Below, piece after piece: positions 13,876 through 60,240 of a stretch of DNA of 64,000 nt. The first letter of the stretch is position 1, and every line of letters starts with the position of its first letter. This DNA comes from Schizochytrium sp. TIO01 (taxonomy: Eukaryota; Protista; Bigyra: Labyrinthulomycetes). A program made the translations under genes and the position numbers. The stretch spans positions 1 to 64,000 of the forward strand of contig SMSO01000013.1 in NCBI GenBank assembly GCA_004764695.1. The letters run 5' to 3'. The notes under the pieces were generated by a model, which did no database searches, was not told the DNA's origin, and saw only the letters and a program-made list of their open reading frames with translations.

Positions 13876-16800
13876 TTAACACAGTTTAAATTCTGGACCA
13901 ACGATGTCTGGCGTTAGCAGAGGCACAAGCTGCTGTTCGAGAGCATGCTGAAGATTTCTGTCTCTAATATTAGCATTCCAGTATTCACGCAGACGTTCTG
14001 CACGTAGCAGCCGCCATGCCTCACGAACCTGCTCGAATGAATCAGCAAAAAATGGATCTTGCCCAAGCTTTTTCAAGCAGGTTCTCACATGACCATGACA
14101 AGCATTTGCATCCTGAGAACTATAGCCAAGACACCAAGCGCAGAAGTGATGACCACAAGTATCATTACCACACTTTACAGCGCAGCAACCGGCAAAATCG
14201 TGTACATATGCCTTACAGTTCGGACAACATGTGCTCAAGATCTTCTCTTGAATATGAAGTAAATGCCGTTGCGCGTCGCGATTCTGTTCATCTGCACGTA
14301 AAACTTCTGCTATGCGCCTTTGGATCTCTTTCTCCGCCCAAACTGCTGCTTCATTTTCTGCCTTCATCTTCGCAATTAACAAAAGATGATTCAAAGCAGT
14401 TGGTGCAAGACGGGTGATTTCTTGACCTGATATCCTTCCATTACATTCAGGTTTCATGCATGCCATCGTTCCATCAGCATCCACGCTTACGTTAGCAAGT
14501 GGCTGTGCCGCCGCTTCTACTGCAGATTCGATACAGTCTCTGCAAAGGAAGTCTCCCTCCTCGCAGCTCGTGCCCTCGGAAAGCAGATGCTCCTCCATGC
14601 ATACTAGACATATCTTGACAGGGATCTTAGGAGCTCCAAAAGCTTCATGTTGGAGTGCTTGGCGAGCGGTGGGGCGCTGACCAGGGTCTGTTGCTGTAAG
14701 AGCATCGATAAGTGTCTGCATTGCAGCGGTTCGCTCAGTAGGATACAGCTCCTTTAAGCTGATGCCCACAGAGTACATGTCCATCGCTGTTTCAAACCTA
14801 TCTACAGGGCCATTCTGCAACTCGGGGGCAACGTACCGTGGCGTTGCCTGAAGTGATGTGTAAGTTGCAGTGTAGTCTGCAACCTTGATGCCGTCAAAGT
14901 CGCCAATCAATGGTGTCCCGTTGCTTGTGAGGAAAATGTTTTCTGGTTTGATGTCACAATGCACAATGCCGTGGGTATGTAAATCCGCCACGCCGATGAG
15001 CAGGCCCACAGCAAGTCGGTCGCGTGCTGCTTTGCCTTCGTTAGGATGACTCTCAATCCACTTGGCAAGGTCACCTTGCTCGTAGAAAGGCATTACAATA
15101 CAGCCACGCGGTACTCCATGTGCCAGATCAACAAAAGCACCATTGATACGTATCACGTGCTGAGACACCACTTTGCCCAGATTGGCAACTTGTCTGTAGA
15201 AGGTTTTGGATTGACTTGAATGTCCAAGCTGAAACTCTTTGAGAACCATAGTTTTACCAAAGTTGTCAAGAACCTTTTGTACTCTCTTGCCACCTCTGGA
15301 AGCAAGGGGCTCGTCGACAGGCTTGAAGTCCGAAACTGTGACATTCGTCAACCAAAGGTCAGAACATGCTACTTCAAAAACACCCTCTGCACTTACGTGA
15401 AGCCTTTCCAGCCAGGCTCTATCTTGCAGCAACTCTGGATAATGTTCCTGCGCGTGTTGCAGAGTCTCAGCAAGCTTATGACGAAAAGCTTTGCTAAGGT
15501 TGATAGGGTTGCCTTGAGAGAGAATGAGCTCTTGTTTCGTGATTCGATTTATAAAATATGCTCGCTCTTCCTCATCCAAGTCCTCAGCGTCGACATCTTC
15601 TCTAGCTCTTTTTAATCTTTCTGTGGCTTTCCTCGACTTGTCAAGTTTCTGGTATAATGCTTCAACATCTGAGACGGAAGGTTCTTTCAAACCCAGTGCT
15701 GCATAGTCATACAGCTCAGAGAGCTCTTTTGGTGTGCACTTGCTCGCGTCATTCAACGCAGTGCTTTCAGAGTATCCTTCAAATCGAGCAAATGTTGAAC
15801 TTATTGCGCAAAGTATTTTGGACAAGTGGGCACTGAGAGTATCTTCATGGAGGACTTCGAGCTCTTCCTTGAGAGCACTCTCAAGTTCAGACAACTCGGG
15901 TTGTAGCTCCATGGCCTGCTCAGGTGTTCTCAGAGCAACCGATAATCCATCACCAAGTTCTAGCTCAGACAATCGAGAGATGACGCGCTTTACAGCTTGT
16001 TGGCTTCGTTCACCAATGTTGTTGGGATGACCTTCTCCACTCCTCTTGTACCCTTCCACGCATTGGACAGCCTGAGCTACGAGTTCTTGGCAGTGTTTGA
16101 AGTCATCTGTGCTGGTCTCTTCATCGACTGGTGCAAGGTTGATCTTTAGATCGTTTACCAAACTTTCGACTCTCACTTTGAATTCTCGCACTGCACTCTC
16201 ATCACTTTCGCAAAGGTTGGCGCGAACCCATGGGTGCACGACCTGCAAAAGTGAATGCAGGTGCCTCCGTTCGGTGTTCCGCTTTTCGATGAGGCTTGGC
16301 AAGCCATTTGCAGAGCTTGCACGAATCTGGTCTTGTAGCGCGTCAAGACTCTCTTTGGAGTTCTTGATGTCAGCGGAAACCTGTCGCAACTTCACTTGGC
16401 CAAAGTAGCCCTGGATCGCCGATCCTACGAATTCCTCAAGCAAGGCAATTCCAGTCTGCAGGGAGTTCCCTCTGACCCCGCCTTGGTCCGCGCGCAAGTC
16501 CGAGACTTTCTTGGCAAGCTGCACCACATCAGCGAAACTCACGCTCGCTCCATCCGGCCGTTCTCTGAGGCGAACAAGAAGACGTAAGCAAACGAGCAAA
16601 ATGATGTTGAAGCAGTAATAAAGGCAGAAGCAAAAGTTAGGATCCCCTATATCTCAATAACACAATTCGTGGAATGAATGATTACACCATCCCAAACAAA
16701 GACTGACCGCATGAACTTACCCAGATCCATCCAAAGTAGCAAGCCCGGCGCTCTTAACGCCATCTTGCTCGTTCTTGGGCTCTGCAGACGGCTCGCTTTC

Positions 16801-19092
16801 TGCCGACTCTATGGAGGCACAAGAATCGGTGTCTGACGAGATATCAATGTCCTCTCCAGGAGAACACACCCTTTCGAACAATTCTTCAGGGGTCAAAGAA
16901 CTCCAACCATAGAAACTGCGGCGTTTTGTAAACGAATGAACGAAAGAAAGACAGTAAAAACGCTTGTTAGAAAAACGATGAACGCATCTAAAGACGGCCT
17001 CGGAAGTCCATATGGAGACATGGAGAGAACCAGCGAAGGCAAGGCTCTGCACAAGCTGGGAATAGCAGCAGAGGGAACGAAACTTACTAGATTTGAACAG
17101 AAGGACATGCTTTGTGCAGAGACTTTGCGACGGCCTTTGCGCCCTCCGAGCCAATGTTGTTATACTGAAGACTGTGAGTATAAATGAATAAGTTTGTTTT
17201 GTTCATTCGTTGTCAGGAAAGACAGGTCCAGTCAGTTGATCCTGTTTTGTTTTGTTTTTCCTCACAATAAAAAGCAATCAGTTCTTCTTTTTCTGCTGCT
17301 GCTGCCTATCAAATTATATAGATTTCCTTCTTCTCTTTGTAAAAAAGAAAAGACTTCTTTGCCTTTCTTTGCGTACCCAACTACGTAAACTACTTAGGTA
17401 GTGTACCAGCAGTACTACAAACACCAAGCACTAAAAAGAAAGAAAGAAAAAGCTTGGTCCTGACTATTACGATAGCTTTCCCTCGTGGATGATTCCACAA
17501 ACGTACTGTAAAGTTTGAAGGTTCTTGCATCCCTCGAGTGCCTTTGCGACGGCCTTTGCGCCCTCCGAGCCAATGTTGTTGTCTGAAGACTGTGAGTATA
17601 AATGAATAAGTTTGTTTTGTTCATTCGTTGTCAGGAAAGACAGGTCCAGTCAGTTGATCCTGTTTTGTTTTGTTTTTCCTCACAATAAAAAGCAATCACC
17701 TCTTCTTCTTCTGCTGCTGCTGCCTATCAAATTATATAGATTTCCTTCTTCTCTTTGTAAAAAAGAAAAGACTTCTTTGCCTTTCTTTGCGTACCCAACT
17801 ACGTAAACTACTTAGGTAGTGTACCAGCAGTACTACAAACACCAAGCACTAAAAAGAAAGAAAGAAAAAGCTTGGTCCTGACTATTACGATAGCTTTCCC
17901 TCGTGGATGATTCCACAAACGTACTCTAAAGTTTGAAGGTTCTTGCATCCCTCGAGTGCCTTTGCGACGGCCTTTGCGCCCTCATCGCCAATGTTGTTGT
18001 TGTAAAGACTGTGAGTATAAATGAATAAGTTTGTTTTGTTCATTCGTTGTCAGGAAAGACAGGTCCAGTCAGTTGATCCTGTTTTGTTTTGTTTTTCCTC
18101 ACAATAAAAAGCAATCAGCTCTTCTTCTCTTCTGCTGCTGCTGCTGCCTATCAAATTATATAGATTTCCTTCTTCTCTTTGTAAAAAAGAAAAGACTTCT
18201 TTGCCTTTCTTTGCGTACCCAACTACGTAAACTACTTAGGTAGTGTACCAGCAGTACTACAAACACCAAGCACTAAAAAGAAAGAAAGAAAAAGCTTGGT
18301 CCTGACTATTACGATAGCTTTCCCTCGTGGATGATTCCACAAACGTACTTAAAGTTTGAAGGTTCTTGCATCCCTCGAGTGCCTTTGCGACGGCCTTTGC
18401 GCCCTCCGAGCCAATGTTGTTGTTGAAAGACTGTGAGTATAAATGAATAAGTTTGTTTTGTTCATTCGTTGTCAGGAAAGACAGGTCCAGTCAGTTGATC
18501 CTGTTTTGTTTTGTTTTTCCTCACAATAAAAAGCAATCAGCTCTTCTTCTTCTTCTTCTGCTGCTGCTGCTGCCTATCAAATTATATAGATTTCCTTCTT
18601 CTCTTTGTAAAAAAGAAAAGACTTCTTTGCCTTTCTTTGCGTACCCAACTACGTAAACTACTTAGGTAGTATACCAGCAGTACTACAAACACCAAGCACT
18701 AAAAAGAAAGAAAGAAAAAGCTTGGTCCTGACTATTACGATAGCGTTCCCTCGTGGATGATTCCACAAACGTACACTAAAGTTCGAAGGTTCTTGCATCC
18801 CTCGAGTGCCTTTGCGACGGCCTTTGCGCCCTCCGAGCCAATGTTGTTTCCACCAAGACTGTGTTTGTTTGTTTGTTTGTTTGTGAACAAGTGAGAGTAA
18901 GTATATGCCATTTCCAACTTCTTCATTAGTGCCACTACAAGTTCAAAACTATTCTTCTTCTACAAAGCTGACTACTACAACAAATCGACGACGCGGTGCC
19001 TCCTTCTTCTGTCTGCTCCCTTCTGCATCGTGCGCTTACCTAATCTCCGTCGTATCTTCTCTGATGTCCTCAATTCTCTCTGCTTTGGTCAT
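13876..19092 (-). CDS. LRR / helical region / protein kinase / RING + IBR-Rcat-like protein, copy A (5 LRR exons; two frameshifted as assembled)
   Basis: Exons: 19092-19040 (MTKAERIEDIREDTTEI); LRRs 18858-18775, 18430-18349 (82 nt), 18008-17925, 17589-17507 (83 nt), 17171-17088; acidic linker 16915-16721; final exon 16564-13876. All introns GT..CAG, phase 2. Kinase motifs VLKE, HCDIKPEN, DFDG, YVAPE, DMYSVG; RING-like CLVC..C..FLCRDC..CMKPEC; CCPNC..GCCAVKC..CGHHFCAWC. Confidence 0.85.
17088..18858 (-). repeat. ~420-bp exon-intron tandem array, copy A (5 LRR exons)
   Basis: Repeated unit with acceptor ..tatactcaCAG and donor GTACGTTTGTGG flanking a GSEGAKAVAKALEGCKNL exon. Confidence 0.95.
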
Positions 19093-20423: not shown

Positions 20424-20954
20424 GGTATCATTAAATTTGATAGTCACTTACTTACTTTTTTGACGACTTAGGTGCAAGATATAAGGAGAGAGTGGTAGTG
20501 GAACCTCTGCAGCAAGCATCCCTGCAAAACATATTCTAGGAGTAGGCTTGAGGAAATAGGAATAGCCTTGAAAGAGCGAGAAAGAAAGGAGGTCATACAT
20601 GCAGACCCGAGGCTGAGTAGGCAAGGTTAGGTCCAAACTAGTAAAATATCCTTTTACCTCGAGAGCACTAAGAAGCATCTCCTTCTTAGGGAAAATCAGA
20701 ATAACTCAGTAAGTCAGACCATGTGTGCAGAACCCGGTCATCGACTTGCAGCTTTACGTCCAGCAGGTTCGAAACCTTCTGCAACGACTGGGACTGTGCC
20801 ACGAGCTTAGCTGAAAAGGCACACGCACGCGCTCGCTCGTAAAGGTATAGATCGTTACTTGCTGCGCGATGTCAGACCACCCAGGTGTTGTCACTGCTTG
20901 AAAAGCTTCAGAATGGCGCTACAACTTTAGAGTAAGTTAACATCGTACTAGCTC

Positions 20955-21182
<228 letters not shown>

Positions 21183-21344
21183 GGTTGATTTATTGAGTAT
21201 GCATCAATCGAAGAAACATCAAAATGACAGCACAACAAAGGTGAAATCCTGAAAGCCAACCTAGATCACTCACGTCCATGCATGCACCTAATATAATGTA
21301 TCATGTGTAATGTATTGCTTGCCATCATTGAATCAAATCGACAG

Positions 21345-42331: not shown

Positions 42332-42450
42332 AACATTCAACACCGGGGCTTCGCATGCAGTCCCCTATCATACTACTGACCCGGCCCTACGCGACTTTAC
42401 TTCTCAGTGCGAATGAGATGAGGTGTTACCCGCGTGGTATGATCGAATGT
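42332..42450 (-). rRNA. 5S rRNA (copy 3)
   Basis: Same 119-nt sequence. Confidence 0.93.
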
Positions 42451-46153: not shown

Positions 46154-49100
46154 TTATTCCAATCTGAAGTTTGCGCCAACAATATCTGGTGTTAGCAAAG
46201 GCGACAATAACTCTTTCAAAACGAGTCGAAGATTTCTATCCTGAATTTTTGCATTCCAGTACTCACGCAGACGTTCAGCGCGCAGCAACTGCCACGCCTC
46301 ACGAACCTGCTCAAATGAATCAGCAAAAAATGGATCTTGCCCAAGTCTTCTTGAACAGGTTCTCACATGATCATGACATGCATCTTCATCCTGAGAACTG
46401 TAGCCAAGACACCAAGCGCAGAAGTGATGACCACAAGTCTCATTACCGCACTCTACAGCACAGCAACCGGCAAAATCGTGTACATATGCCTTACAGTTCG
46501 GACAACATGTGCTCAAGATCTTCTCTTGAATATGAAGTAAATGAAGCCGTGCGTCGCGATTCTGTTCATCAGCACGTAAAACTTGTGCTATGCGCCTTTG
46601 GATCTCCTTCTCCGCCCAAACTGCTGCTTCATTTTCTGCCTTCATCTTCGCAATCAACAAAAGATGATTCAAAGCGCTTGGTGCAAGACGGGTGATTTCT
46701 TGACCTGATATCCTTCCACTACATTCAGGTTTCATGCATGCCATCGTTCCATCAGCATCCACTCTTACGTTAGCAAGTGGCCGTGCCGCCGCTTCTACTG
46801 AAGATTCGATACAGTCTCTGCAAAGGAAGTCTCCCTCCTCGCAGCTCGTGCCCTCGGAAAGCAGATGCTCCTCCATGCATACTAGACATATCTTGACAGG
46901 GATCTTAGGAGCTCCAAAAGCTTCATGTTGGAGTGCTTGGCGAGCGGTTGGACGCTGGCCAGGGTCTGTTGCTGTAAGAGCATCGATAAGTTTCTGCATT
47001 GCAGCGGTTCGCTCAGTAGGATACAGCTCCTTTAAGCTTATGCCCACAGAGTACATGTCCATCGCTGTTTCAAACCTATCTACAGGCCCATTCTGCAACT
47101 CGGGGCAAATGTACCGTGGCGTGGCCTGGAGTGATGTGTAAGTTGCGATGTAGTCCGCAACCTTGATGCCGTCAAAGTCGCCGATCAATGGTGTCCCGTT
47201 GCTTGTGAGGAAAATGTTTTCTGGTTTGATGTCACAATGCACAATGCCGTGGGTATGTAAATCCGCCACACCGATAAGCAGGCCCATAGCAAGTCGGTCG
47301 CGCGCTGCTTTGCCTTCGTTAGGATGACTCTCAATCCACTTGGCAAGGTCACCTTGCTCGTAGAAAGGCATAATAATACAACCACGCGGTACTCCATGTG
47401 CCATGTCCACAAAAGCACCAGTGATACGGATCACGTGCTGAGACACCACTTTGCCCAGATTGGCAACTTGTCTGTAGAAGGTTTTAGATTGACTTAGATG
47501 TCCAAGCTGAAACTCTTTGAGAACCATAAGTTTATCATCTCCATCAAATACTTTCTGGACTCTCTTGCCACCTCTGGAAGCAAGGGGCTCGCCGACAGGT
47601 TTGAAGTCCGTAACTGTGACATTCGTTAACCAAAGGTCAGAACATGCTACTTCAAAAACACCCTCTGCACTTACGTGAAGCCTTTCTAGCCAGGCTCTAT
47701 CTTGCAGCAACTCTGGATAATGTTCCTGCGCGTGTTGCAGAGTCTCAGCAAGCTTATGACGAAAAGCTTTGCTAAGGTCGATAGGGTTGCCTTGAGAGAG
47801 AATGAGCTCTTGTTTCTTGATACGATTTCTAAAATATGCTCGCTCTTCCTCATCCAAGTCCTCTATTTCAAGTTCTTCTTTGGCTCTCTTCAAAATTTCT
47901 GTGGCTTTCCTCGACTTGTCAAGTTTCTGGAATAATGCTTCAACATCTGAGACAGAAGGTTCTTTCAAACCCAGTGCTGCATAGTCATACAGCTCAGAGA
48001 GCTTTTCTGGTGTGCACTTGCTCGTGTCATTCAATGCAGCACATTCAGTGTATCCTTCAAATCGAGCGAATGTTGAACTTATCGCGCAAAGTATTTCCCA
48101 CAATTGGGTACGAAGTGTATCTCCTTGTAGAACTTCGATCTCTTGCTTGAGAGCACTCTCAAGTTCAGACAACTCTGGTTCTAGCTCCATGGCCTGCTCA
48201 GGTGTCCTCAGGGCAACCGATAATCCATCACCAAGTTCTAGCTCAGACAATCGAGAGGTAACGCGCTTTACAGCTTGTTGGCTTCGTTCACCAATGTTGT
48301 TGTGTTGGCCTTCTCCACTCCTCTTGTACCCTTCCACGCATTGGACAGCCTGAATAACGAGTTCTTGGCAGTGTTTGAAGTCATCTGTGATGGTCTCTTC
48401 ATCGACTGGAGCAAGGTTGATCTTTAGATCGCTTACCAAACTTTCAACTCTCACTTTGAATTCTCGCACTGCACTCTCATCACTTTCACAAAGGTTGGCG
48501 CGAACCCATGGGTACACAACCTGCAAAAGTGAATACAGGTACCTCCGTTCGGTGTTCCGCTTTTCGATGAGGCTGGGCAAGCCATCAGCAGAGCTTGCAC
48601 GAATCTGGCCTTGTAGCACGTCAAGACTCTCTTTGGAGTTCTTGATGTCAGCGAAAACCTGTCGCAACTTCACTTGGCCAAAGTAGCCCTGGATCGCCGA
48701 TCCTACGAACTCCTCAAGCAAGGCAATCCCAGTTTGCAGGGAGTTTCCTCTGACCCCACCTCGGTCAACGCGCAAGTCCGAGACTTTCTTGGCAAGCTGC
48801 ACCACATCAGCGAAACTCACGCTCGCTCCATCCGCCCGTTCTCTGAGACGAACAAGAAGACGTAAGCAAACGAGCAAAATGATGTTGAAGCAGCAACAAA
48901 AGCAGAAGCAAAAGTTAGGATACCCTCTATCTCAATAACTCAATTCGTGGAATGACTAATTACACGATCCCAAACAAAGATTAACCGAATGAACTTACCC
49001 ACATCCATCCAAAGTAGCAAGCCCGGTGCCATCAATGCCGTCTTGCTCGTTCTTGGGCTCTGCAGAAGGCTCGCTTTCTGCCGACTCTATGGAAGCATAG

Positions 49101-52100
49101 GAATCGAGCTCTGACGAGAAATCTGCAATGTCCTCTCCAGGAGAACACATTTCGAACAATTGTTTTGGGGTCAAAGGCAAATTCCGATTATAGAAACTGT
49201 GGCGTTTTGCAAACGAATGAACGAAAGAAAGAGAATATAAGTGCTGGTTAGAAAAACGATGAACGCATCTAAAGACAGCCTCGAAAGTCCATGTTAAGAC
49301 ATGGAGAGAACCAGCGAAGGCAAGGCTCTGCGCAAGCTGGGAATAGCAGCAGAGGGAACGGAACTTACTAGATTTTAACAGAAGGACATGCTTTGTGCAG
49401 AGACTTTGCGACGGCCTTTGCGCCCTCCGAGCCAATGTCGTTCTCAGAAAGACTGTGAGTAGAAATAAATAAGTTTGTTTTGTTCATTCGTTGTCAGGAA
49501 AGACAGGTCCAGTCAGTTGATCCTGTTTTGTTTTGTTTTGTTTTTCCTCACAATAAAAAGCAATCAGCTCTTCTTCTGCTGCTGCTGCTGCTGCCTATCA
49601 AATTATATAGATTTCCTTCTTCTCTTTGTAAAAAAGAAAAGACTTCTTTGCCTTTCTTTGCGTACCCAACTACGTAAACTACTTAGGTAGTGTACCAGCA
49701 GTACTACAAACACTAAGCACTCAAAAGAAAGAAAGAAAAAGCTTGGTCCTGACTATTACGATAGCTTTCCCTCGTGGATGATTCCACAAACGTACACTAA
49801 AGTTTGAAGGTTCTTGCATCCCTCGAGTGCCTTTGCGACGGCCTTTGCGCCCTCCGAGCCAATGTTGTTGTTGTCAAGACTGTGAGTATAAATGAATAAG
49901 TTTGTTTTGTTCATTCGTTGTCAGGAAAGACAGGTCCAGTCAGTTGATCCTGTTTTGTTTTGTTTTGTTTTTCCTCACAATAAAAAGCAATCAGCTCTTC
50001 TTCTTCTGCTGCTGCTGCCTATCAAATTATATAGATTTCCTTTTGCCCTTCCTTCTTCTCTTTGTAAAAAAGAAAAGACTTCTTTGCCTTTCTTTGCGTA
50101 CCCAACTACGTAAACTACTTAGGTAGTGTACCAGCAGTACTACAAACACCAAGCACTAAAAAGAAAGAAAGAAAAAGCTTGGTCCTGACTATTACGATAG
50201 CTTTCCCTCGTGGATGATTCCACAAACGTACACTAAAGTTTGAAGGTTCTTGCATCCCTCGAGTGCCTTTGCGACGGCCTTTGCGCCCTCCGAGCCAATG
50301 TTGTTGCCAGAAAGACTGTGAGTATAAATGAATAAGTTTGTTTTGTTCATTCGTTGTCAGGAAAGACAGGTCCAGTCAGTTGATCCTGTTTTGTTTTGTT
50401 TTTCATCACAATAAAAAGCAATCAGCTTTTGTTCTGCTGTTGCTGTTGCCTATCAAATTATATAGATTTCCTTCTTCTCTTTGTAAAAAAGAAAAGACTT
50501 CTTTGCCTTTCTTTGCGTACCCAACTACGTAAACTACTTAGGTAGTGTACCAGCAGTACTACAAACACCAAGCACTAAAAAGAAAGAAAGAAAAAGCTTG
50601 GTCCTGACTATTACGATAGCTTTCCCTCGTGGATGATTCCACAAACGTACTCTAAAGTTTGAAGGTTCTTGCATCCCTCGAGTGCCTTTGCGACGGCCTT
50701 TGCGCCCTCCGAGCCAATGTTGTTGCTACGAAGACTGTGAGTATAAATGAATAAGTTTGTTTTGTTCATTCGTTGTCAGGAAAGACAGGTCCAGTCAGTT
50801 GATCCTGTTTTGTTTTGTTTTTCATCACAATAAAAAGCAATCACCTCTTCTTCTTCTGCTGCTGCTGCCTATCAAATTATATAGATTTCCTTCTTGTCTT
50901 TGTAAAAAAGAAAAGACTTCTTTGCCTTTCTTTGCGTACCCAACTACGTAAACTACTTAGGTAGTGTACCAGCAGTACTACAAACACTAAGCACTCAAAA
51001 GAAAGAAAGAAAAAGCTTGGTCCTGACTATTACGATAGCTTTCCCTCGTGGATGATTCCACAAACGTACACTAAAGTTTGAAGGTTCTTGCATCCCTCGA
51101 GTGCCTTTGCGACGGCCTTTGCGCCCTCCGAGCCAATGTTGTTGCCAGAAAGACTGTGAGTATAAATGAATAAGTTTGTTTTGTTCATTCGTTGTCAGGA
51201 AAGACAGGTCCAGTCAGTTGATCCTGTTTTGTTTTGTTTTTCATCACAATAAAAAGCAATCAGCTTTTGTTCTGCTGTTGCTGTTGCCTATCAAATTATA
51301 TAGATTTCCTTCTTCTCTTTGTAAAAAAGAAAAGACTTCTTTGCCTTTCTTTGCGTACCCAACTACGTAAACTACTTAGGTAGTGTACCAGCAGTACTAC
51401 AAACACCAAGCACTAAAAAGAAAGAAAGAAAAAGCTTGGTCCTGACTATTACGATAGCTTTCCCTCGTGGATGATTCCACAAACGTACTCTAAAGTTTGA
51501 AGGTTCTTGCATCCCTCGAGTGCCTTTGCGACGGCCTTTGCGCCCTCATCGCCAATGTTGTTGCCAGAAAGACTGTGAGTATAAATGAATAAGTTTGTTT
51601 TGTTCATTCGTTGTCAAGAAAGACAGGTCCAGTCAGTTGATCCTGTTTTGTTTTGTTTTGTTTTTCCTCACAATAAAAAGCAATCAGCTTTTGTTCTGCT
51701 GTTGCTGTTGCCTATCAAATTATATAGATTTCCTTCTTCTCTTTGTAAAAAAGAAAAGACTTCTTTGCCTTTCTTTGCGTACCCAACTACGTAAACTACT
51801 TAGGTAGTGTACCAGCAGTACTACAAACACCAAGCACTAAAAAGAAAGAAAGAAAAAGCTTGGTCCTGACTATTACGATAGCTTTCCCTCGTGGATGATT
51901 CCACAAACGTACCCAAGTTGAGTCAGGTTCTTGCATCCCTCGAGTGCCTTTGCGACGGCCTTTGCGCCCTCCGAGCCAATGTTGTTGTTGTTAAGACTGT
52001 GAGTATAAATGAATAAGTTTGTTTTGTTCATTCGTTGTCAGGAAAGACAGGTCCAGTCAGTTGATCCTGTTTTGTTTTGTTTTTCCTCACAATAAAAAGC

Positions 52101-55100
52101 AATCAGCTCTTCTTCTGCTGCTGCTGCTGCTGCCTATCAAATTATATAGATTTCCTTTTGCCCTTCCTTCTTCTTTTTGTAAAAAAGAAAAGACTTCTTT
52201 GTCTTTCTTTGTGTACCCAACTACACCAGCAGTACTACAAACACCAAGCACTAAAAAGAAAGAAAGAAAAAGCTTGGTCCTGACTATTACGATAGCTTTC
52301 CCTCGTGGATGATTCCACAAACGTACACTAAAGTTTGAAGGTTCTTGCATCCCTCGAGTGCCTTTGCGACGGCCTTTGCGCCCTCATCGCTAATCTTGTT
52401 GTTGTAAAGACTGTGAGTATAAATGAATAAGTTTGTTTTGTTCATTCGTTGTCAGGAAAGACAGGTCCCAGTCAGTTGATCCTGTTTTGTTTTGTTTTTC
52501 CTCACAATAAAAAGCAATCAGCTCTTCTTCTTCTTCTGCTGCTGCTGCTGCCTATCAAATTATATAGATTTCCTTCTTCTCTTTGTAAAAAAGAAAAGAC
52601 TTCTTTGCCTTTCTTTGCCTACCCAACTACGTAAACTACGTAGATAGTGTACCAGCAGTACTATAAACACCAAGCACTAAAAAGAAAGAAAGAAAAAGCT
52701 TGGTCCTGACTATTACGATAGCTTTCCCTCGTGGATGATTCCACAAACGTACCCAAGTTGAGTCAGGTTCTTGCATCCCTCGAGTGCCTTTGCGACGGCC
52801 TTTGCGCCCTCCGAGCCAATGTTGTTCTTATTAAGACTGTGAGTATAAATGAATAAGTTTGTTTTGTTCATTCGTTGTCAGGAAAGACAGGTCCCAGTCA
52901 GTTGATCCTGTTTTGTTTTGTTTTCATCACAATAAAAAGCAATCACCTCTTCTTCTTCTGCTGCTGCTGCTGCTGCTGCGTATCAAATTATATAGATTTC
53001 CTTCTTCTCTTTGTAAAAAAGAAAAGACTTCTTTGCCTTTCTTTGCCTACCCAACTACGTAAACTACGTAGATAGTGTACCAGCAGTACTATAAACACCA
53101 AGCACTAAAAAGAAAGAAAGAAAAAGCTTGGTCCTGACTATTACGATAGCTTTCCCTCGTGGATGATTCCACAAACGTACTACAATTGTTGAAGGTTCTT
53201 GCATCCCTCGAGTGCCTTTGCGACGGCCTTTGCGCCCTCCGAGCCAATGTTGTTGCTACGAAGACTGTGAGTATAAATGAATAAGTTTGTTTTGTTCATT
53301 CGTTGTCAGGAAAGACAGGTCCAGTCAGTTGATCCTGTTTTGTTTTGTTTTTCATCACAATAAAAAGCAATCAGCTTTTGTTCTGCTGTTGCTGTTGCCT
53401 ATCAAATTATATAGATTTCCTTCTTCTCTTTGTAAAAAAGAAAAGACTTCTTTGCCTTTCTTTGCGTACCCAACTACGTAAACTACTTAGGTAGTGTACC
53501 AGCAGTACTACAAACACCAAGCACTAAAAAGAAAGAAAGAAAAAGCTTGGTCCTGACTATTACGATAGCTTTCCCTCGTGGATGATTCCACAAACGTACT
53601 TCAGATAAGTCAGGTTCTTGCATCCCTCGAGTGCCTTTGCGACGGCCTTTGCGCCCTCCGAGCCAATGTTGTTGTTGTTAAGACTGTGAGTATAAATGAA
53701 TAAGTTTGTTTTGTTCATTCGTTGTCAGGAAAGACAGGTCCAGTCAGTTGATCCTGTTTTGTTTTGTTTTTCCTCACAATAAAAAGCAATCAGCTCTTCT
53801 TCTTCTGCTGCTGCTGCTGCCTATCAAATTATATAGATTTCCTTTTGCCCTTCCTTCTTCTTTTTGTAAAAAAGAAAAGACTTCTTTGTCTTTCTTTGTG
53901 TACCCAACTACACCAGCAGTACTACAAACACCAAGCACTAAAAAGAAAGAAAGAAAAAGCTTGGTCCTGACTATTACGATAGCTTTCCCTCGTGGATGAT
54001 TCCACAAACGTACACTAAAGTTTGAAGGTTCTTGCATCCCTCGAGTGCCTTTGCGACGGCCTTTGCGCCCTCATCGCTAATCTTGTTGTTGTAAAGACTG
54101 TGAGTATAAATGAATAAGTTTGTTTTGTTCATTCGTTGTCAGGAAAGACAGGTCCCAGTCAGTTGATCCTGTTTTGTTTTGTTTTTCCTCACAATAAAAA
54201 GCAATCAGCTCTTCTTCTTCTTCTGCTGCTGCTGCTGCCTATCAAATTATATAGATTTCCTTCTTCTCTTTGTAAAAAAGAAAAGACTTCTTTGCCTTTC
54301 TTTGCCTACCCAACTACGTAAACTACGTAGATAGTGTACCAGCAGTACTATAAACACCAAGCACTAAAAAGAAAGAAAGAAAAAGCTTGGTCCTGACTAT
54401 TACGATAGCTTTCCCTCGTGGATGATTCCACAAACGTACCCAAGTTGAGTCAGGTTCTTGCATCCCTCGAGTGCCTTTGCGACGGCCTTTGCGCCCTCCG
54501 AGCCAATGTTGTTCTTATTAAGACTGTGAGTATAAATGAATAAGTTTGTTTTGTTCATTCGTTGTCAGGAAAGACAGGTCCCAGTCAGTTGATCCTGTTT
54601 TGTTTTGTTTTCATCACAATAAAAAGCAATCACCTCTTCTTCTTCTGCTGCTGCTGCTGCTGCTGCGTATCAAATTATATAGATTTCCTTCTTCTCTTTG
54701 TAAAAAAGAAAAGACTTCTTTGCCTTTCTTTGCCTACCCAACTACGTAAACTACGTAGATAGTGTACCAGCAGTACTATAAACACCAAGCACTAAAAAGA
54801 AAGAAAGAAAAAGCTTGGTCCTGACTATTACGATAGCTTTCCCTCGTGGATGATTCCACAAACGTACTACAATTGTTGAAGGTTCTTGCATCCCTCGAGT
54901 GCCTTTGCGACGGCCTTTGCGCCCTCCGAGCCAATGTTATTCTCAGAAAGACTGTGAGTATAAATGAATAAGTTTGTTTTGTTGATTCGTTGTCAGGAAA
55001 GACAGGTCCAGTCAGTTGATCCTGTTTTGTTTTGTTTTTCCTCACAATAAAAAGCAATCACCTCTTCTTCTGCTGCTGCTGCTGCTGCCTATCAAATTAT

Positions 55101-58100
55101 ATAGATTTCCTTTTGCCCTTCCTTCTTCTCTTTGTAAAAAAGAAAAGACTTCTTTGCCTTTCTTTGCGTACCCAACTACACCAGCAGTACTACAAACACC
55201 AAGCACTAAAAAGAAAGAAAGAAAAAGCTTGGTCCTGACTATTACGATAGCTTTCCCTCGTGGATGATTCCACAAACGTACTACAATTGTTGAAGGTTCT
55301 TGCATCCCTCGAGTGCCTTTGCGACGGCCTTTGCGCCCTCCGAGCCAATGTTATTCTCAGAAAGACTGTGAGTATAAATGAATAAGTTTGTTTTGTTCAT
55401 TCGTTGTCAAGAAAGACAGGTCCAGTCAGTTGATCCTGTTTTGTTTTGTTTTTCCTCGCAATAAAAAGCAATCACCTCTTCTTCTTCTGCTGCTGCTGCG
55501 TATCAAATTATATAGATTTCCTTCTTCTCTTTGTAAAAAAGAAAAGACTTCTTTGCCTTTCTTTGCGTACCCAACTACACCAGCAGTACTACAAACACCA
55601 AGCACTAAAAAGAAAGAAAGAAAAAGCTTGGTCCTGACTATTACGATAGCTTTCCCTCGTGGATGATTCCACAAACGTACCCAAGTTGAGTCAGGTTCTT
55701 GCATCCCTCGAGTGCCTTTGCGACGGCCTTTGCGCCCTCATCGCTAATCTTGTTGTTGTAAAGACTGTGAGTATAAATGAATAAGTTTGTTTTGTTCATT
55801 CGTTGTCAGGAAAGACAGGTCCCAGTCAGTTGATCCTGTTTTGTTTTGTTTTTCCTCACAATAAAAAGCAATCAGCTCTTCTTCTTCTTCTGCTGCTGCT
55901 GCTGCCTATCAAATTATATAGATTTCCTTCTTCTCTTTGTAAAAAAGAAAAGACTTCTTTGCCTTTCTTTGCCTACCCAACTACGTAAACTTCGTAGATA
56001 GTGTACCAGCAGTACTATAAACACCAAGCACTAAAAAGAAAGAAAGAAAAAGCTTGGTCCTGACTATTACGATAGCTTTCCCTCGTGGATGATTCCACAA
56101 ACGTACCCAAGTTGAGTCAGGTTCTTGCATCCCTCGAGTGCCTTTGCGACGGCCTTTGCGCCCTCATCGCTAATCTTGTTGCCAGAAAGACTGTGAGTAT
56201 AAATGAATAAGTTTGTTTTGTTGATTCGTTGTCAAGAAAGACAGGTCCAGTCAGTTGATCCTGTTTTGTATTGTTTTTCCTCACAATAAAAAGCAATCAC
56301 CTCTTCTTCTGCTGCTGCTGTTGCTGCCTATCAAATTATATAGATTTCCTTTTGCCCTTCCTTCTTCTCTTTGTAAAAAAGAAAAGACTTCTTTGCCTTT
56401 CTTTGCGTACCCAACTACACCAGCAGTACTACAAACACCAAGCACTAAAAAGAAAGAAAGAAAAAGCTTGGTCCTGACTATTACGATAGCTTTCCCTCGT
56501 GGATGATTCCACAAACGTACACTAAAGTTTGAAGGTTCTTGCATCCCTCGAGTGCCTTTGCGACGGCCTTTGCGCCCTCCGAGCCAATGTTATTCTCAGA
56601 AAGACTGTGAGTATAAATGAATAAGTTTGTTTTGTTCATTCGTTGTCAAGAAAGACAGGTCCAGTCAGTTGATCCTGTTTTGTTTTGTTTTTCCTCGCAA
56701 TAAAAAGCAATCACCTCTTCTTCTTCTGCTGCTGCTGCGTATCAAATTATATAGATTTCCTTCTTCTCTTTGTAAAAAAGAAAAGACTTCTTTGCCTTTC
56801 TTTGCGTACCCAACTACACCAGCAGTACTACAAACACCAAGCACTAAAAAGAAAGAAAGAAAAAGCTTGGTCCTGACTATTACGATAGCTTTCCCTCGTG
56901 GATGATTCCACAAACGTACCCAAGTTGAGTCAGGTTCTTGCATCCCTCGAGTGCCTTTGCGACGGCCTTTGCGCCCTCCGAGCCAATGTTGTTCTTATTA
57001 AGACTGTGAGTATAAATGAATAAGTTTGTTTTGTTCATTCGTTGTCAGGAAAGACAGGTCCCAGTCAGTTGATCCTGTTTTGTTTTGTTTTTCCTCACAA
57101 TAAAAAGCAATCAGCTCTTCTTCTTCTGCTGCTGCTGCTGCTGCGTATCAAATTATATAGATTTCCTTCTTCTCTTTGTAAAAAAGAAAAGACTTCTTTG
57201 CCTTTCTTTGCGTACCCAACTACACCAGCAGTACTACAAACACCAAGCACTAAAAAGAAAGAAAGAAAAAGCTTGGTCCTGACTATTACGATAGCTTTCC
57301 CTCGTGGATGATTCCACAAACGTACACTAAAGTTTGAAGGTTCTTGCATCCCTCGAGTGCCTTTGCGACGGCCTTTGCGCCCTCCGAGCCAATGTTATTC
57401 TCAGAAAGACTGTGAGTATAAATGAATAAGTTTGTTTTGTTCATTCGTTGTCAAGAAAGACAGGTCCAGTCAGTTGATCCTGTTTTGTTTTGTTTTTCCT
57501 CGCAATAAAAAGCAATCACCTCTTCTTCTTCTGCTGCTGCTGCGTATCAAATTATATAGATTTCCTTCTTCTCTTTGTAAAAAAGAAAAGACTTCTTTGC
57601 CTTTCTTTGCGTACCCAACTACACCAGCAGTACTACAAACACCAAGCACTAAAAAGAAAGAAAGAAAAAGCTTGGTCCTGACTATTACGATAGCTTTCCC
57701 TCGTGGATGATTCCACAAACGTACCCAAGTTGAGTCAGGTTCTTGCATCCCTCGAGTGCCTTTGCGACGGCCTTTGCGCCCTCCGAGCCAATGTTGTTCT
57801 TATTAAGACTGTGAGTATAAATGAATAAGTTTGTTTTGTTCATTCGTTGTCAGGAAAGACAGGTCCCAGTCAGTTGATCCTGTTTTGTTTTGTTTTTCCT
57901 CACAATAAAAAGCAATCAGCTCTTCTTCTTCTGCTGCTGCTGCTGCTGCGTATCAAATTATATAGATTTCCTTCTTCTCTTTGTAAAAAAGAAAAGACTT
58001 CTTTGCCTTTCTTTGCGTACCCAACTACGTAAACTACTTAGGTAGTGTACCAGCAGTACTACAAACACCAAGCACTAAAAAGAAAGAAAGAAAAAGCTTG

Positions 58101-58899
58101 GTCCTGACTATTACGATAGCTTTCCCTCGTGGATGATTCCACAAACGTACTTCAGATAAGTCAGGTTCTTGCATCCCTCGAGTGCCTTTGCGACGGCCTT
58201 TGCGCCCTCATCGCTAATCTTGTTGTTGTAAAGACTGTGAGTATAAATGAATAAGTTTGTTTTGTTCATTCGTTGTCAGGAAAGACAGGTCCCAGTCAGT
58301 TGATCCTGTTTTGTTTTGTTTTTCCTCACAATAAAAAGCAATCAGCTCTATTTCTTCTTCTTCTGCTGCTGCTGCTCCTGCCTATCAAATTATATAGATT
58401 TCCTCTTCTCTTTGTAAAAAAGAAAAGACTTCTTTGCCTTTCTTTGCGTACCCAACTACGTAAACTACTTAGGTAGTGTACCAGCAGTACTACAAACACC
58501 AAGCACTAAAAAGAAAGAAAGAAAAAGCTTGGTCCTGACTATTACGATAGCTTTCCCTCGTGGATGATTCCACAAACGTACACTACTCGTTGAAGGTTCT
58601 TGCATCCCTCGAGTGCCTTTGCGACGGCCTTTGCGCCCTCATGACCAATTCTTTTCTCACCAAGACTGTGTTTGTTTGTTTGTTTGTTGGTGAACAAGTG
58701 AGAGTAAGTATATGCCATTTCTAACTTCTTCATTGGTGCCACTACTAATACAAAGCTATTCTTCTTCTACAAAGCTGACTACTACAACACATCGACGACG
58801 CGATGCCTCCTTCTTCTGTCTCCTCCCTTCTGCATCGTGCACCTACCAAATCTCCGTCGTATCTTCTGTGATGTCCTCAATTCTCTCTGCTTTGGTCAT
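46154..58899 (-). CDS. LRR(23) / helical region / protein kinase / RING + IBR-Rcat-like protein, copy B, predicted 1623 aa
   Basis: Exon 58899-58847 (53 nt). Then 23 exons of 84 nt with lower coordinates 58582, 58151, 57725, 57326, 56920, 56521, 56107, 55681, 55282, 54868, 54440, 54014, 53600, 53181, 52753, 52327, 51913, 51489, 51070, 50651, 50232, 49796, 49369. Linker 49196-48999; final exon 48842-46154. Total 4872 nt, divisible by 3, no internal stop seen, all GT..CAG phase 2. Same kinase and zinc-finger motifs as copy A. Confidence 0.9.
49369..58665 (-). repeat. 399-436-bp exon-intron tandem array, copy B (23 LRR exons)
   Basis: Near-identical introns that vary in (CTT)n(CTG)n length, an optional ttttgcccttcc insertion and an optional ~20-nt deletion; invariant 45-nt exon core. 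Confidence 0.97.
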
Positions 58900-60121: not shown

Positions 60122-60240
60122 AACATTCAACACCGGGGCTTCGCATGCAGTCCCCTATCATACTACTGACCCGGCCCTACGCGACTTTACTTCTCAGTGC
60201 GAATGAGATGAGGTGTTACCCGCGTGGTATGATCGAATGT
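60122..60240 (-). rRNA. 5S rRNA (copy 4)
   Basis: Same 119-nt sequence, followed by a T run. Confidence 0.93.

What the first reader, a model, noticed from the sequence alone, without database searches (positions are those of the whole stretch)
49369..58665. Hypervariability confined to exon ends and reshuffled from a small pool around an invariant 45-nt core
Seen: the core encoding EGAKAVAKALEGCKN appears identical, including third codon positions, in the 22 non-capping exons of B and 4 of A. The 5' ends vary as L-[DN,SG,RS,NN,YN,NK,SE]-N followed by [NIGS,NIGD,KISD]. The 3' ends vary as [QTLV,QTLD,TQLG,QQLY,TYLN]. Variants differ by multi-nucleotide blocks and recur in new pairings: YNNKISD with QTLV (52327, 54014), TQLG (55681) and TYLN (58151); RS with QTLD (50651) and QQLY (53181); NN with TQLG (51913) and TYLN (53600); SE with QQLY (54868, 55282) and QTLV (56521, 57326); SG with NIGS, NIGD and KISD. 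Known: these x positions of LxxLxLxxN form the concave ligand-binding face of LRRs. Inference: crossover or gene conversion in the invariant core and introns generates combinatorial binding surfaces under diversifying selection, loosely analogous to VLR cassette assembly.
Basis: partly seen in the sequence, partly recalled or inferred. Interest (0 to 1): 0.9.

Follow-up and report, generated by a model that had tools for sequence, protein, structure and literature searches.

The report
Hypervariable LRR exon array, homogenised introns
A 419-base "spacer repeat" between two 5S rRNA genes of a thraustochytrid-like protist has the structure of a gene's exon-intron array, one leucine-rich repeat per exon, where recombination keeps introns and the helix-coding core identical while the binding-strand codons stay highly variable and get re-paired, as in fast-evolving recognition receptors.

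Summary
On the minus strand, 22 tandem 84-nt exons share a 45-nt core that is identical in all 22, and in 4 exons of the neighbouring copy. Diversity is 0.24 and 0.43 at the two exon ends, 0 in the core and 0.02 in the introns.

Several units are clean chimeras whose junction falls inside the invariant core or the intron. Across 207 family exons, markers on either side of the core are in complete linkage equilibrium.

Three points need correcting:
- The "small pool" is local to each array and comes from recent unit duplication. Family-wide there are 139 distinct 5' ends.
- Core and intron invariance is concerted evolution. A dispersed paralog with the same exon design has diverged cores and unrelated introns.
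- Nothing points to VLR-like somatic assembly. The germline gene is a complete, in-frame 1,623-codon model: LRR array, kinase, then a Cys-rich tail.

The closest analogues are Podospora HNWD repeats and the Ectocarpus and Tetrahymena one-LRR-per-exon arrays.

This scan has already reported the same family on other DNA of this genome. No single reads were available, so the within-exon pairings rest on the assembly alone.

The parts
58847..58899 (-). Exon 1 of gene B: ATG plus 17 codons and 2 bases, followed by a GTAGGT donor. There is no signal-peptide-like start (MTKAERIEDITEDTTEI..).
   Evidence: Read from the sequence. The same N-terminus (MTKVTRIIDIKEDTTEV) begins the transcript-derived family protein P0090.
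49796..58665 (-). Array of 22 exons of exactly 84 nt, separated by 315-352-nt near-identical phase-2 introns (419-bp tandem unit). Each exon encodes one 28-residue RI-type LRR. In each exon the first 25 nt and last 14 nt are variable and the middle 45 nt is invariant.
   Evidence: LRR_6, NOD2 and RI similarity of single exons.
55681..55764 (-). Example of a chimeric exon (YNNKISD + TQLG). Alignment columns 1-72 are identical to unit E54014, and columns 26 to the end of the unit are identical to E56920/E57725, so the exchange junction lies inside the invariant core.
   Evidence: This exact exon is unique in the genome.
53181..53264 (-). Chimeric exon (RS + QQLY). The 5' part equals E50651, and the rest of the unit, including the intron, equals E54868. 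It marks the edge of a 4-unit (1,687-bp) higher-order duplication in which E54868..E53600 corresponds to E53181..E51913.
49369..49452 (-). Capping LRR exon (84 nt; LSENDIGSEGAKAVAKSLHKACPSVKI) with a GTAAGT donor.
   Evidence: Pfam LRR_6 E = 0.0037. The matching cap KSLHKSCPFVRI is present in P0090.
48999..49196 (-). Linker exon (198 nt) that joins the LRR array in frame to the effector exon.
   Evidence: Splice sites and frame read. The homologous linker (..NFSLTPRELF..GEDID..) is present in the spliced transcript protein P0090.
46154..48842 (-). Last exon: helical region, protein kinase domain, and a Cys-rich RING/IBR-like tail. The five parts of the model sum to 4,872 nt, which is 1,624 codons in frame.
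   Evidence: Pkinase E = 8e-27, 94.7 bits against a cutoff of 31.7. The tail is only weakly like parkin RING2 (E = 0.05) and IBR_2 (E = 2.7). Against gene A, dN/dS = 0.27.
17088..18858 (-). Gene A, the positional paralog in the neighbouring rDNA unit. It has 4 LRR exons plus a cap with the same invariant core. Two of the exons are 82 and 83 nt.
   Evidence: Its effector ORF at 13876-16599 is 90% identical in protein to B.
42332..42450 (-). 5S rRNA gene flanking gene B on its downstream side.
   Evidence: Rfam, 96.5 bits.
60122..60240 (-). 5S rRNA gene flanking gene B on its upstream side. The gene therefore sits between two consecutive 5S genes inside an rDNA unit.
   Evidence: Rfam, 96.5 bits. 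This is the position described for 'Group 5' LORE-TEARS.

Best explanation
This is the ligand-binding domain of a cytosolic receptor-like protein, made of an RI/NLR-type LRR array, a protein kinase and a Cys-rich tail. It is encoded as a tandem array of exon-plus-intron units that lies in the rDNA/5S spacer.

Unequal crossing-over and gene conversion among about 340 such units, within arrays and between chromosome ends, keep the introns and the 45-nt helix-coding core identical. This is concerted evolution.

The codons for the beta-strand and its flanks lie at the two exon ends and are joined across each splice site. They escape homogenisation and stay highly diverse, most likely because selection favours different solvent-exposed residues in every repeat.

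Because exchange junctions fall in the identical stretches (core and intron), the two half-strands are re-paired freely. Recent unit duplications give each long array its own small local set of recurring variants.

Shown here: the anatomy, the diversity pattern, the chimeric units, the linkage equilibrium, and concerted evolution measured against a non-homogenised paralog.

Inferred: selection as the force maintaining diversity, ligand binding, and the signalling role of the kinase and tail.
For: Coding anatomy:
- All 22 exons are 84 nt with canonical splice sites and no stops or indels, while the introns carry 52 gapped columns.
- The whole model sums to 1,624 in-frame codons.
- P0090, a protein predicted from a poly-A transcriptome assembly of Aurantiochytrium (MMETSP0961), has the same start, four 28-residue LRRs, cap, linker and Cys-rich tail. 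It maps exon by exon at 84-94% identity to a paralog in this genome.
- Contigs of RNA-guess runs join exons at the predicted borders, including two adjacencies native to gene B: TYLN|NK at 57809->58152 and QTLV|RS. The listed joints of the DNA run X1 do not do this.

Structure:
- In the P0090 model the LRR part has pLDDT 80-93. The strands cover LRR positions 3-7, straddling the splice site, and the helix is the core.
- Foldseek matches the model to NLRP1, NOD2, NLRP3 and RI LRR domains.

Concerted evolution:
- The A and B effector ORFs differ at dS = 0.19, but A-versus-B introns differ by only 0.016 and the cores by 0.
- Intron divergence between arrays on different contigs (0.028) equals that within arrays (0.027).
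- The dispersed paralog L123 has the same 84-nt exons, but its cores differ at 7-11 of 45 nt and its introns (268, 146 and 219 nt) cannot be aligned.
- A second array family in the window encodes EGAKAV with different synonymous codons.

Exchange:
- Clean chimeric units, whole-unit identities, Rm = 11, and linkage equilibrium across the core in 207 exons.

Selection-like signals:
- Hypervariable codons take up to 18 residues but carry only 3-10% aliphatic/hydrophobic ones, against 39% expected from a uniform code.
- Stops are few, 5 against about 18 expected.
- Each residue is written almost always by a single codon.
- pN/pS is 1.7, against 0.32 at scaffold codons in the same blocks.
Against: - Across-core pairings rest on the assembly alone. 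Every available run was held as k=31 contigs, which cannot bridge a 45-nt invariant core.
- Synonymous diversity at scaffold codons inside the variable blocks is also high (pS 0.26, against intron 0.028). The excess is therefore not purely amino-acid-driven. It fits old block haplotypes that resist homogenisation, but equally a locally raised mutation rate.
- The pN/pS estimate comes from saturated multi-hit codons and is not a formal test.
- About 17 family exons carry 1-2-nt indels exactly in the hypervariable codons: 11 of 19 in the most homogeneous array and 2 in gene A. This indicates either consensus errors at those sites or real decay.
- Splicing evidence is at family level, not specific to gene B, and the runs' RNA status is a guess.
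Confidence: 0.75

Rival explanations
1. Assembly or polishing artefact. In a 9-kb array of near-identical units, misplaced reads produce a consensus that mixes variants, which creates false chimeric exons and false 'new pairings'.
For: No single-read check was possible. Indels of 1-2 nt cluster exactly at the hypervariable codons and are commonest in the array with the most uniform introns (L031: intron pi 0.006, 11 of 19 exons affected). Consensus errors at heterogeneous columns would produce this pattern.
Against: All 22 exons of B are intact and exactly 84 nt. The chimeras are clean: each parent segment matches with 0 differences over hundreds of bases, intron indel haplotypes included. Linkage equilibrium holds over 207 exons in 22 arrays on many contigs. 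Two across-intron adjacencies of B appear as spliced joints in independent runs.
Confidence: 0.08
2. Targeted hypermutation. A mutational process focused on the exon ends, rather than selection acting on exchanged variants, produces the diversity.
For: Diversity at the exon ends (0.24-0.43) exceeds even the synonymous divergence of the effector ORF (0.19). Synonymous sites within the blocks are elevated (pS 0.26). Indels are confined to the same codons.
Against: At the hypervariable codons each amino acid is written by essentially one codon (S = TCT 24/25, T = ACT 46/46, N = AAC 19/19). This indicates spread of a limited set of alleles by descent and exchange, not repeated random hits. Residue usage is strongly biased towards polar and aromatic residues, and stops are depleted. 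No mutator element (DGR-like template, reverse transcriptase) was seen in the unit.
Confidence: 0.08
3. Programmed or somatic diversification: VLR-like cassette copying, or frequent mitotic unequal exchange, gives cells of one clone different arrays.
For: Two pairs of whole units in B are 100% identical, so duplication is very recent. Adjacent rDNA units carry 4 and 22 repeats. rDNA spacers are classic mitotic recombination hot spots (general knowledge).
Against: The germline gene is complete and in frame, with ordinary splice sites. There is no incomplete recipient gene with donor cassettes, so the defining VLR layout is absent. No data on cell-to-cell variation could be obtained.
Confidence: 0.06
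4. Non-coding structural spacer, which is the published reading of LORE-TEARS; the apparent exons are coincidental.
For: The preprint describes these repeats as spacers lacking similarity to GenBank sequences and never mentions LRRs.
Against: The unit length varies only in the introns. The 84-nt segments keep frame, splice sites and LRR consensus. They join in frame to a kinase ORF under purifying selection (dN/dS 0.27). A spliced transcript-derived protein of the family exists, and spliced joints are seen in RNA-guess runs.
Confidence: 0.03

Closest known systems
Podospora anserina HNWD (het-d/het-e) WD40-repeat genes and other fungal NLRs with highly conserved internal repeats (Paoletti, Saupe & Clave 2007, PMC1805685)
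   Same: Repeats evolve in concert within and between loci. A few codons per repeat, on the interaction surface, are hypervariable. Repeat number varies between paralogs, and repeat reshuffling plus selection generates the recognition repertoire (abstract read).
   Different: Here the repeat is an RI-type LRR, not WD40. Each repeat carries its own intron, which is homogenised together with it. The effector is a kinase plus a Cys-rich tail, not a NACHT/STAND module. The arrays sit in rDNA/5S spacers.
Ectocarpus ROCO LRR genes with one 72-nt exon per LRR and exon shuffling (Zambounis et al. 2012, PMC3341825; also PMC11378527)
   Same: One LRR per exon of fixed length, symmetric intron phase, a variable number of exons, positively selected sites on the concave face, and a proposed immune-receptor role.
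   Different: The Ectocarpus exons are 72 nt, and that paper describes them as 'phase 0' exons (length a multiple of three). Here the exons are 84 nt with phase-2 introns that split the beta-strand codon. Near-identical introns and an invariant core are not the reported feature there. The effector there is ROC-COR, not kinase plus Cys-rich tail.
[quoted passage not shown] 2019, PMC6564038)
   Same: Tandem exon-intron units of fixed exon length. The phase-2 'junction codon' is shared between neighbouring exons. The units are masked as repeats and enriched in subtelomeric regions. Unequal crossing-over is invoked, and some are fused to protein kinases.
   Different: The exon is 90 bp rather than 84 bp and the lineage is different. 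That family is associated with a LINE-like element. The passages read do not describe an rDNA-spacer location or an invariant core with hypervariable ends.
Lamprey/hagfish VLR assembly
   Same: Diversity is carried by LRR concave-face residues, and short identical stretches inside LRR modules serve as exchange points (general knowledge).
   Different: VLR genes are incomplete in the germline and are completed somatically from flanking cassettes. Here the germline gene is complete and spliced, and exchange is inferred only on an evolutionary scale.
LORE-TEARS 'Group 5' repeats of Aurantiochytrium limacinum (preprint 10.1101/2023.06.15.545109)
   Same: A unit of about 421 bp, located between two consecutive 5S genes in subtelomeric rDNA regions, with copy numbers up to about 22.
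   Different: They were published as non-coding spacers possibly involved in chromosome-end maintenance. Here they read as the exon-intron array of a protein-coding gene.

Membership tests
RI/NLR-type leucine-rich repeat (Pfam LRR_6 class) | 28-29-residue repeat with the LxxLxLxxNxIGxxGaxxLaxaL consensus | tested here: met
   All 22 exons plus the cap translate to this consensus. Single exons hit designed RI-like LRRs, NOD2, RI and RanGAP in the PDB, with E down to 1.8e-7.
RI/NLR-type leucine-rich repeat (Pfam LRR_6 class) | Pfam LRR_6 score above the curated cutoff | tested here: inconclusive
A single 27-residue exon scores 20.9 bits (E = 3.4e-4), below the 23.4-bit whole-protein cutoff.
RI/NLR-type leucine-rich repeat (Pfam LRR_6 class) | Alternating strand-helix solenoid fold | tested here: met
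   The model of the natural family member P0090 has pLDDT 80-93 in the LRR part, with strands every 28 residues and helices between them. Foldseek matches NLRP1, NOD2, NLRP3 and RI LRR domains at about 3 A rmsd over about 130 columns.
One-LRR-per-exon shuffling arrays (Ectocarpus ROCO, Tetrahymena 90-bp type) | Every repeat on its own exon of fixed length, with symmetric intron phase | tested here: met
   22 of 22 exons are 84 nt and all introns are phase 2. Family-wide, 103 of 127 exons have the canonical 25+45+14 layout.
One-LRR-per-exon shuffling arrays (Ectocarpus ROCO, Tetrahymena 90-bp type) | Homology to those families (ROC-COR effector; 72- or 90-bp exon) | tested here: not met
   The effector is Pkinase plus a Cys-rich tail, with no ROC/COR hit. 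The exon is 84 nt. The system works like them but is not a member.
Concerted-evolution repeat receptors (fungal HNWD type) | Repeats more alike within and between paralogs than the rest of the genes are | tested here: met
   A-versus-B effector dS is 0.19, against intron 0.016 and core 0. Between-array intron divergence is 0.028.
Concerted-evolution repeat receptors (fungal HNWD type) | A few hypervariable codons per repeat under positive selection on the interaction surface | tested here: inconclusive
   The location is met. pN/pS is 1.7 at saturated codons with linked synonymous variation, and no recombination-aware site test was run.
Concerted-evolution repeat receptors (fungal HNWD type) | NACHT/STAND nucleotide-binding domain | tested here: not met
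   Pfam finds only kinase models in the 907-residue ORF.
VLR-type somatic cassette assembly | Incomplete germline gene completed from flanking donor cassettes | tested here: not met
   The germline model is complete: 1,624 in-frame codons with canonical splice sites throughout.
VLR-type somatic cassette assembly | Cell-to-cell sequence variation at the locus | not testable with these tools
   Only collapsed contigs of public runs were available.
RBR (RING-between-RING) ubiquitin ligase | RING1-IBR-RING2(Rcat) zinc-finger triad | tested here: inconclusive
   The tail has only weak matches: parkin RING2 E = 0.05, IBR_2 E = 2.7, zf-C3HC4_4 E = 5.4. In the P0090 model this region has pLDDT below 50.
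LORE-TEARS Group 5 | ~421-bp unit repeated in tandem between two consecutive 5S rRNA genes near rDNA | tested here: met
   A 419-bp unit x 22.1 copies lies between the 5S genes at 42332 and 60122, with 18S/28S genes in the same window.

The most novel reading that the evidence does not exclude
By sitting inside the rDNA/5S spacer at chromosome ends, the array uses the high mitotic recombination of rDNA as a diversity generator. Unequal sister-chromatid exchange and ectopic conversion would keep re-pairing half-strands and changing repeat number, so that even clonal populations would hold many receptor variants. Exon skipping between the identical phase-2 introns could add further in-frame variants.
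Probability: 0.12. Interest if true: 0.85.

Novelty: new variant of a known kind. Interest (0 to 1): 0.6.

Why it matters
If right, sequences published as non-coding chromosome-end spacers are the recognition domains of a large receptor-like family. The genome holds at least 342 core-bearing exons and several dozen loci with a roughly 900-residue open frame for the effector.

The exon-intron unit shows unusually cleanly how concerted evolution and diversification can coexist at a scale of tens of bases. Introns and the helix codons are wiped uniform genome-wide, while 37 bases flanking each splice site stay diverse and are freely re-paired.

This gives a testable model for how a unicellular stramenopile, one whose relative Aurantiochytrium limacinum carries persistent mirusviruses, could build a recognition repertoire. 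It also extends the one-LRR-per-exon design from brown algae and ciliates to labyrinthulomycetes, and links it to rDNA recombination.

It is also a caution for genome annotation: satellite-like repeats can be genes.

Tried and rejected
The contigs that carry the 56-59% identical effector homologs P0001 and P0002 from other organisms could not be fetched, so no cross-species test of concerted evolution was possible.
- The metagenome scan with the effector alignment returned only generic kinases, at most 45% identical over the catalytic loop.
- The representative-protein search with one exon (read through into 13 intron codons to reach the 30-residue minimum) found about 2,000 RI-like LRR proteins. 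It found no spliced array-type member with the invariant core. The closest was P0090, at 69%.
- A second word-based search with the P0090 LRR part found no array-type proteins either.
- The look-up of sequencing runs gave only Logan contigs, with no raw reads. Read laying therefore could not test across-core pairings, exon skipping or array-length heterogeneity. Joints between non-adjacent exons, such as TYLN|NN, cannot be told apart from paralog transcripts.
- Nei-Gojobori pN/pS is unreliable at these saturated codons.
- Linkage inside gene B across the 45-nt core (MI 1.64) and across the 335-nt intron (MI 1.61) is equal. This hints at denser junctions per base in the core, but the numbers are too small to claim a hot spot.
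- The joined (spliced) protein was never submitted to a search or fold. Only single exons by reference, and the natural protein P0090, were used.
- The taxid printed in the P0090 header (87120) resolves to a fungus and is evidently a typo. The same header names the organism 'Auranti...'.
- The organism of the window itself could not be named with the tools.
Full report
**What is there**

The window holds two units of an rDNA repeat of about 32 kb. 28S ends at 1964, 18S lies at 28721-30508 and 28S at 30898-34241. There are four 5S genes and several tRNA genes.

Between the 5S genes at 42332 and 60122 lies a minus-strand gene. Tandem Repeats Finder sees its main part as a 419-bp unit repeated 22.1 times at 49404-58640.

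Read on the minus strand, each unit is an 84-nt exon followed by a 315-352-nt intron. Acceptors are ...CACAG and donors GTACGT.

The gene model has five parts:
- exon 1, 58847-58899
- 22 LRR exons, 58582-58665 down to 49796-49879
- a capping LRR exon, 49369-49452
- a 198-nt linker exon, 48999-49196
- a last exon, 46154-48842

These sum to 4,872 nt, which is 1,624 codons with no in-frame stop in any part. I worked this out by arithmetic and by reading each exon separately.

The last exon carries a protein kinase domain (Pkinase E = 8e-27). It ends in a Cys-rich tail that is only weakly like parkin RING2 and IBR (E = 0.05 and 2.7). There is no signal-peptide-like N-terminus.

The introns are phase 2: two bases of a codon end each exon and one base (always T) starts the next.

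**Checking the observation**

In an alignment of the 21 complete units, diversity by region was as follows:

| Region | Variable columns | Pi |
|---|---|---|
| Exon 5' end (25 nt) | 25 of 39, both ends together | 0.24 |
| Exon 3' end (14 nt) | (included above) | 0.43 |
| Core (45 nt) | 0 of 45 | 0 |
| Intron | 28 of 365 | 0.020 |

The contrast between exon ends and introns gives Fisher p = 1e-15. All length variation is intronic: 52 gapped columns in the introns against none in the exons (p = 1.5e-5). Variation stops exactly at the splice donor and starts four bases after the acceptor.

**What the variable codons are**

Each exon translates to an RI/NLR-type LRR. Single exons hit designed RI-like LRRs, NOD2, ribonuclease inhibitor and RanGAP in the PDB, and Pfam LRR_6 at E = 3.4e-4.

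A search of 1.8 billion representative proteins with one exon found a natural spliced family member, P0090. It comes from a poly-A transcriptome assembly labelled Aurantiochytrium (MMETSP0961).

P0090 has the same N-terminus as gene B, four 28-residue LRRs, the same cap and linker, and the Cys-rich tail without the kinase. It maps exon by exon at 84-94% identity to a locus on contig C31 of this genome. This independently supports the exon borders of the family.

Its AlphaFold model is confident in the LRR part (pLDDT 80-93). Strands fall at residues 16-20, 44-48, 72-76 and 100-104, with helices between them. Foldseek matches NLRP1, NOD2, NLRP3 and RI LRR domains.

Mapped onto the repeat, the strand covers LRR positions 3-7, and the split codon is position 5. 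The invariant 45-nt core encodes the start of the helix through the following loop.

The hypervariable codons, taken from 109 family exons, are LRR positions 2, 3, 5, 7 and 8. They show 6-18 residue types and pi of 0.4-0.7 at all three codon positions. There is also a two-state D/S codon (GAT/TCG) at position 13. Coordinates are not returned by the tool, so solvent exposure is inferred from LRR geometry, not computed.

**Concerted evolution, not sequence constraint, explains the invariant parts**

- Genes A and B lie in adjacent rDNA units. Their effector exons differ at dS = 0.19 and dN = 0.05, with 90% protein identity. Their LRR introns differ by only 0.016 and their cores not at all.
- The genome holds 342 core matches with at most 3 mismatches.
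- In 113 units from 14 arrays on several contigs, intron divergence between arrays (0.028) equals that within arrays (0.027). Core divergence is 0.009 or less, and exon-end divergence is 0.26-0.36.
- A natural control exists. The dispersed paralog on C31 has the same 84-nt phase-2 exons, but its cores differ at 7-11 of 45 bases. Its introns (268, 146 and 219 nt) cannot be aligned.
- A second array family in the window (385-bp unit, plus strand, 21370-24026) encodes the same EGAKAV motif with different synonymous codons.

Uniformity is therefore a property of the tandem arrays, produced by exchange.

**Re-pairing**

Several units in gene B are clean chimeras:
- E55681 equals E54014 over alignment columns 1-72 and equals E56920/E57725 from column 26 to the end of the unit. 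Its junction therefore lies inside the invariant core.
- E53181 equals E50651 up to column 76 and E54868 from column 14 onward.
- E56107 is a three-part mosaic.
- E56521 has its junction in the intron.

Two pairs of whole units are 100% identical (E52753 = E54440, E56920 = E57725) and another pair differs by one base. A four-unit block of 1,687 bp is duplicated. The Hudson-Kaplan minimum is 11 events, and one interval is exactly the core.

Across 207 exons from 22 arrays, the GAT/TCG marker just 5' of the core and the CTTCAA/CTGACT marker just 3' of it occur as 65/18/64/18. The odds ratio is 1.02 and p = 1. Both markers differ by several bases, so recurrent mutation is implausible. Markers across the intron are equally unlinked.

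**Correcting the 'small pool'**

Family-wide there are 139 distinct 5' ends, 62 distinct 3' ends and 190 distinct exons among the 207 sampled.

Recurring variants are local. Identical 5' ends are shared 10.7 times more often within an array than between arrays, or 7.4 times without gene B. Besides B, redundancy is seen in other long arrays: C18 has 15 distinct 5' ends in 19 exons, and C30 has 10 in 17.

Most of B's recurring 5' ends were not found among the 105 other exons first sampled. The chimeric exon E55681 is unique in the genome.

The small pool is therefore what recent unit duplication leaves behind, not a genome-wide cassette library. The 3' ends are drawn from a more limited shared set.

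**Is it selection?**

Signals consistent with selection for diverse surface residues:
- Hypervariable codons are depleted of aliphatic/hydrophobic residues (3-10%, against 39% for a uniform code). They are rich in S, G, R, Y, D, N, Q, W, E and K.
- Stops are scarce, 5 against about 18 expected.
- Each residue is written almost always by one codon. This argues for spread of alleles by descent and exchange rather than random repeated hits.
- pN/pS is 1.7 at these codons, against 0.32 at scaffold codons in the same blocks.

The estimate is from saturated codons. Synonymous diversity at the scaffold codons (0.26) also far exceeds intron diversity. The safest reading is that whole short blocks resist homogenisation. 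This most likely reflects selection for different surface residues, possibly helped by heteroduplex rejection at the mismatched blocks. A locally raised mutation rate is not excluded.

**Reads**

All public runs holding the stretch were available only as k=31 contigs.

Contigs of runs guessed to be RNA do join exons at the predicted borders. Two of the joints match adjacencies native to gene B:
- TYLN|NK, at 57809->58152
- QTLV|RS, laid at 53264->54015 but native to the exon pair E51070 -> E50651

The listed joints of the DNA run X1 lie elsewhere. Joints between non-adjacent exons cannot be separated from paralog transcripts.

**Comparison with what is known**

The position and unit size match the 'Group 5' LORE-TEARS of Aurantiochytrium limacinum. 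These were published as spacers with no GenBank similarity, and the text does not mention LRRs. No paper in the library links them to LRR genes.

The closest mechanistic analogues are:
- the Podospora HNWD WD40 repeats, which combine concerted evolution with four selected surface codons (PMC1805685);
- the Ectocarpus ROCO arrays with 72-nt one-LRR exons (PMC3341825);
- the Tetrahymena arrays of 90-bp exons with phase-2 introns (PMC6564038).

Nothing supports VLR-like somatic assembly. The system works like these known ones but belongs to none of them: there is no ROC-COR, no NACHT, the exon size differs, and the location in rDNA spacers is not described in what I read of them.

This scan has already reported the same family from other pieces of this genome. 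Added here are:
- the exchange analysis;
- the array-local origin of the small pool;
- the non-homogenised control paralog;
- the transcript-derived family protein.

**Caveats**

- About 17 family exons carry 1-2-nt indels exactly in the hypervariable codons. Eleven of 19 are in the most uniform array and two are in gene A, which as assembled has a frameshift and a stop. These may be consensus errors at heterogeneous columns or real decay. Either way they are a warning about base-level accuracy at these sites.

Noticed in passing
window 17088-18858 (minus): Gene A's LRR exons are 84, 82, 84, 83 and 84 nt. The missing bases lie in the hypervariable codons, and as assembled the 82-nt exon runs into a TAA. 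The three middle exons sum to 249 nt, so skipping them would keep the frame. The effector ORF is intact (dN/dS 0.27 against B).
   Followed up: partly
L031 (G000:C7:1068500-1077500) and other arrays: 1-2-nt indels occur almost only inside hypervariable codons 2-3 or at the split codon, in about 17 of 127 exons. Eleven of the 19 exons in L031 are affected, and that array's introns are the most uniform (pi 0.006). The cause could be a consensus-error hot spot or real decay.
   Followed up: partly
window 21370-24026 (plus): A second one-LRR-per-exon array (385-bp unit, 84-nt phase-2 exons, CGACAG acceptor, GTAAGT donor). It is hypervariable at the same codons but has a different core sequence and a different intron family. 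A 276-bp tandem (2.3 copies, 21435-22074) sits in its first intron, and a (GCTT)59 microsatellite lies at 20951-21187.
   Followed up: partly
window 1-64000: The protein-coding genes lie inside rDNA repeat units of about 32 kb. Each unit carries 18S-5.8S-28S, two 5S genes, and tRNA genes, one of which is 115 nt and probably contains an intron. The two units differ in length mainly through the LRR array, 4 units against 22.
   Followed up: partly
window ~24281-24400 and beyond: A run of N (a withheld stretch) follows the second array. It explains the GC dip to 0.24 at 24-26 kb.
   Followed up: no
L123 (G000:C31:8497133-8500945), minus strand: A dispersed family member with 3 LRR exons plus a cap, joined directly to the Cys-rich tail with no kinase. 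It is the genomic counterpart (84-94% identity) of the Aurantiochytrium transcriptome protein P0090, so the family has at least two effector architectures.
   Followed up: partly
G000, many contigs: More than 50 loci encode the Cys-rich tail within open frames of about 900-970 residues, many of them near contig ends. This indicates a family of several dozen LRR-kinase genes.
   Followed up: no
window 46154-48842 (minus): The kinase has HCD instead of HRD in the catalytic loop and DFD instead of DFG (..IVHCDIKPEN.., ..IGDFDGIK..). Both are conserved in all six aligned homologs.
   Followed up: no
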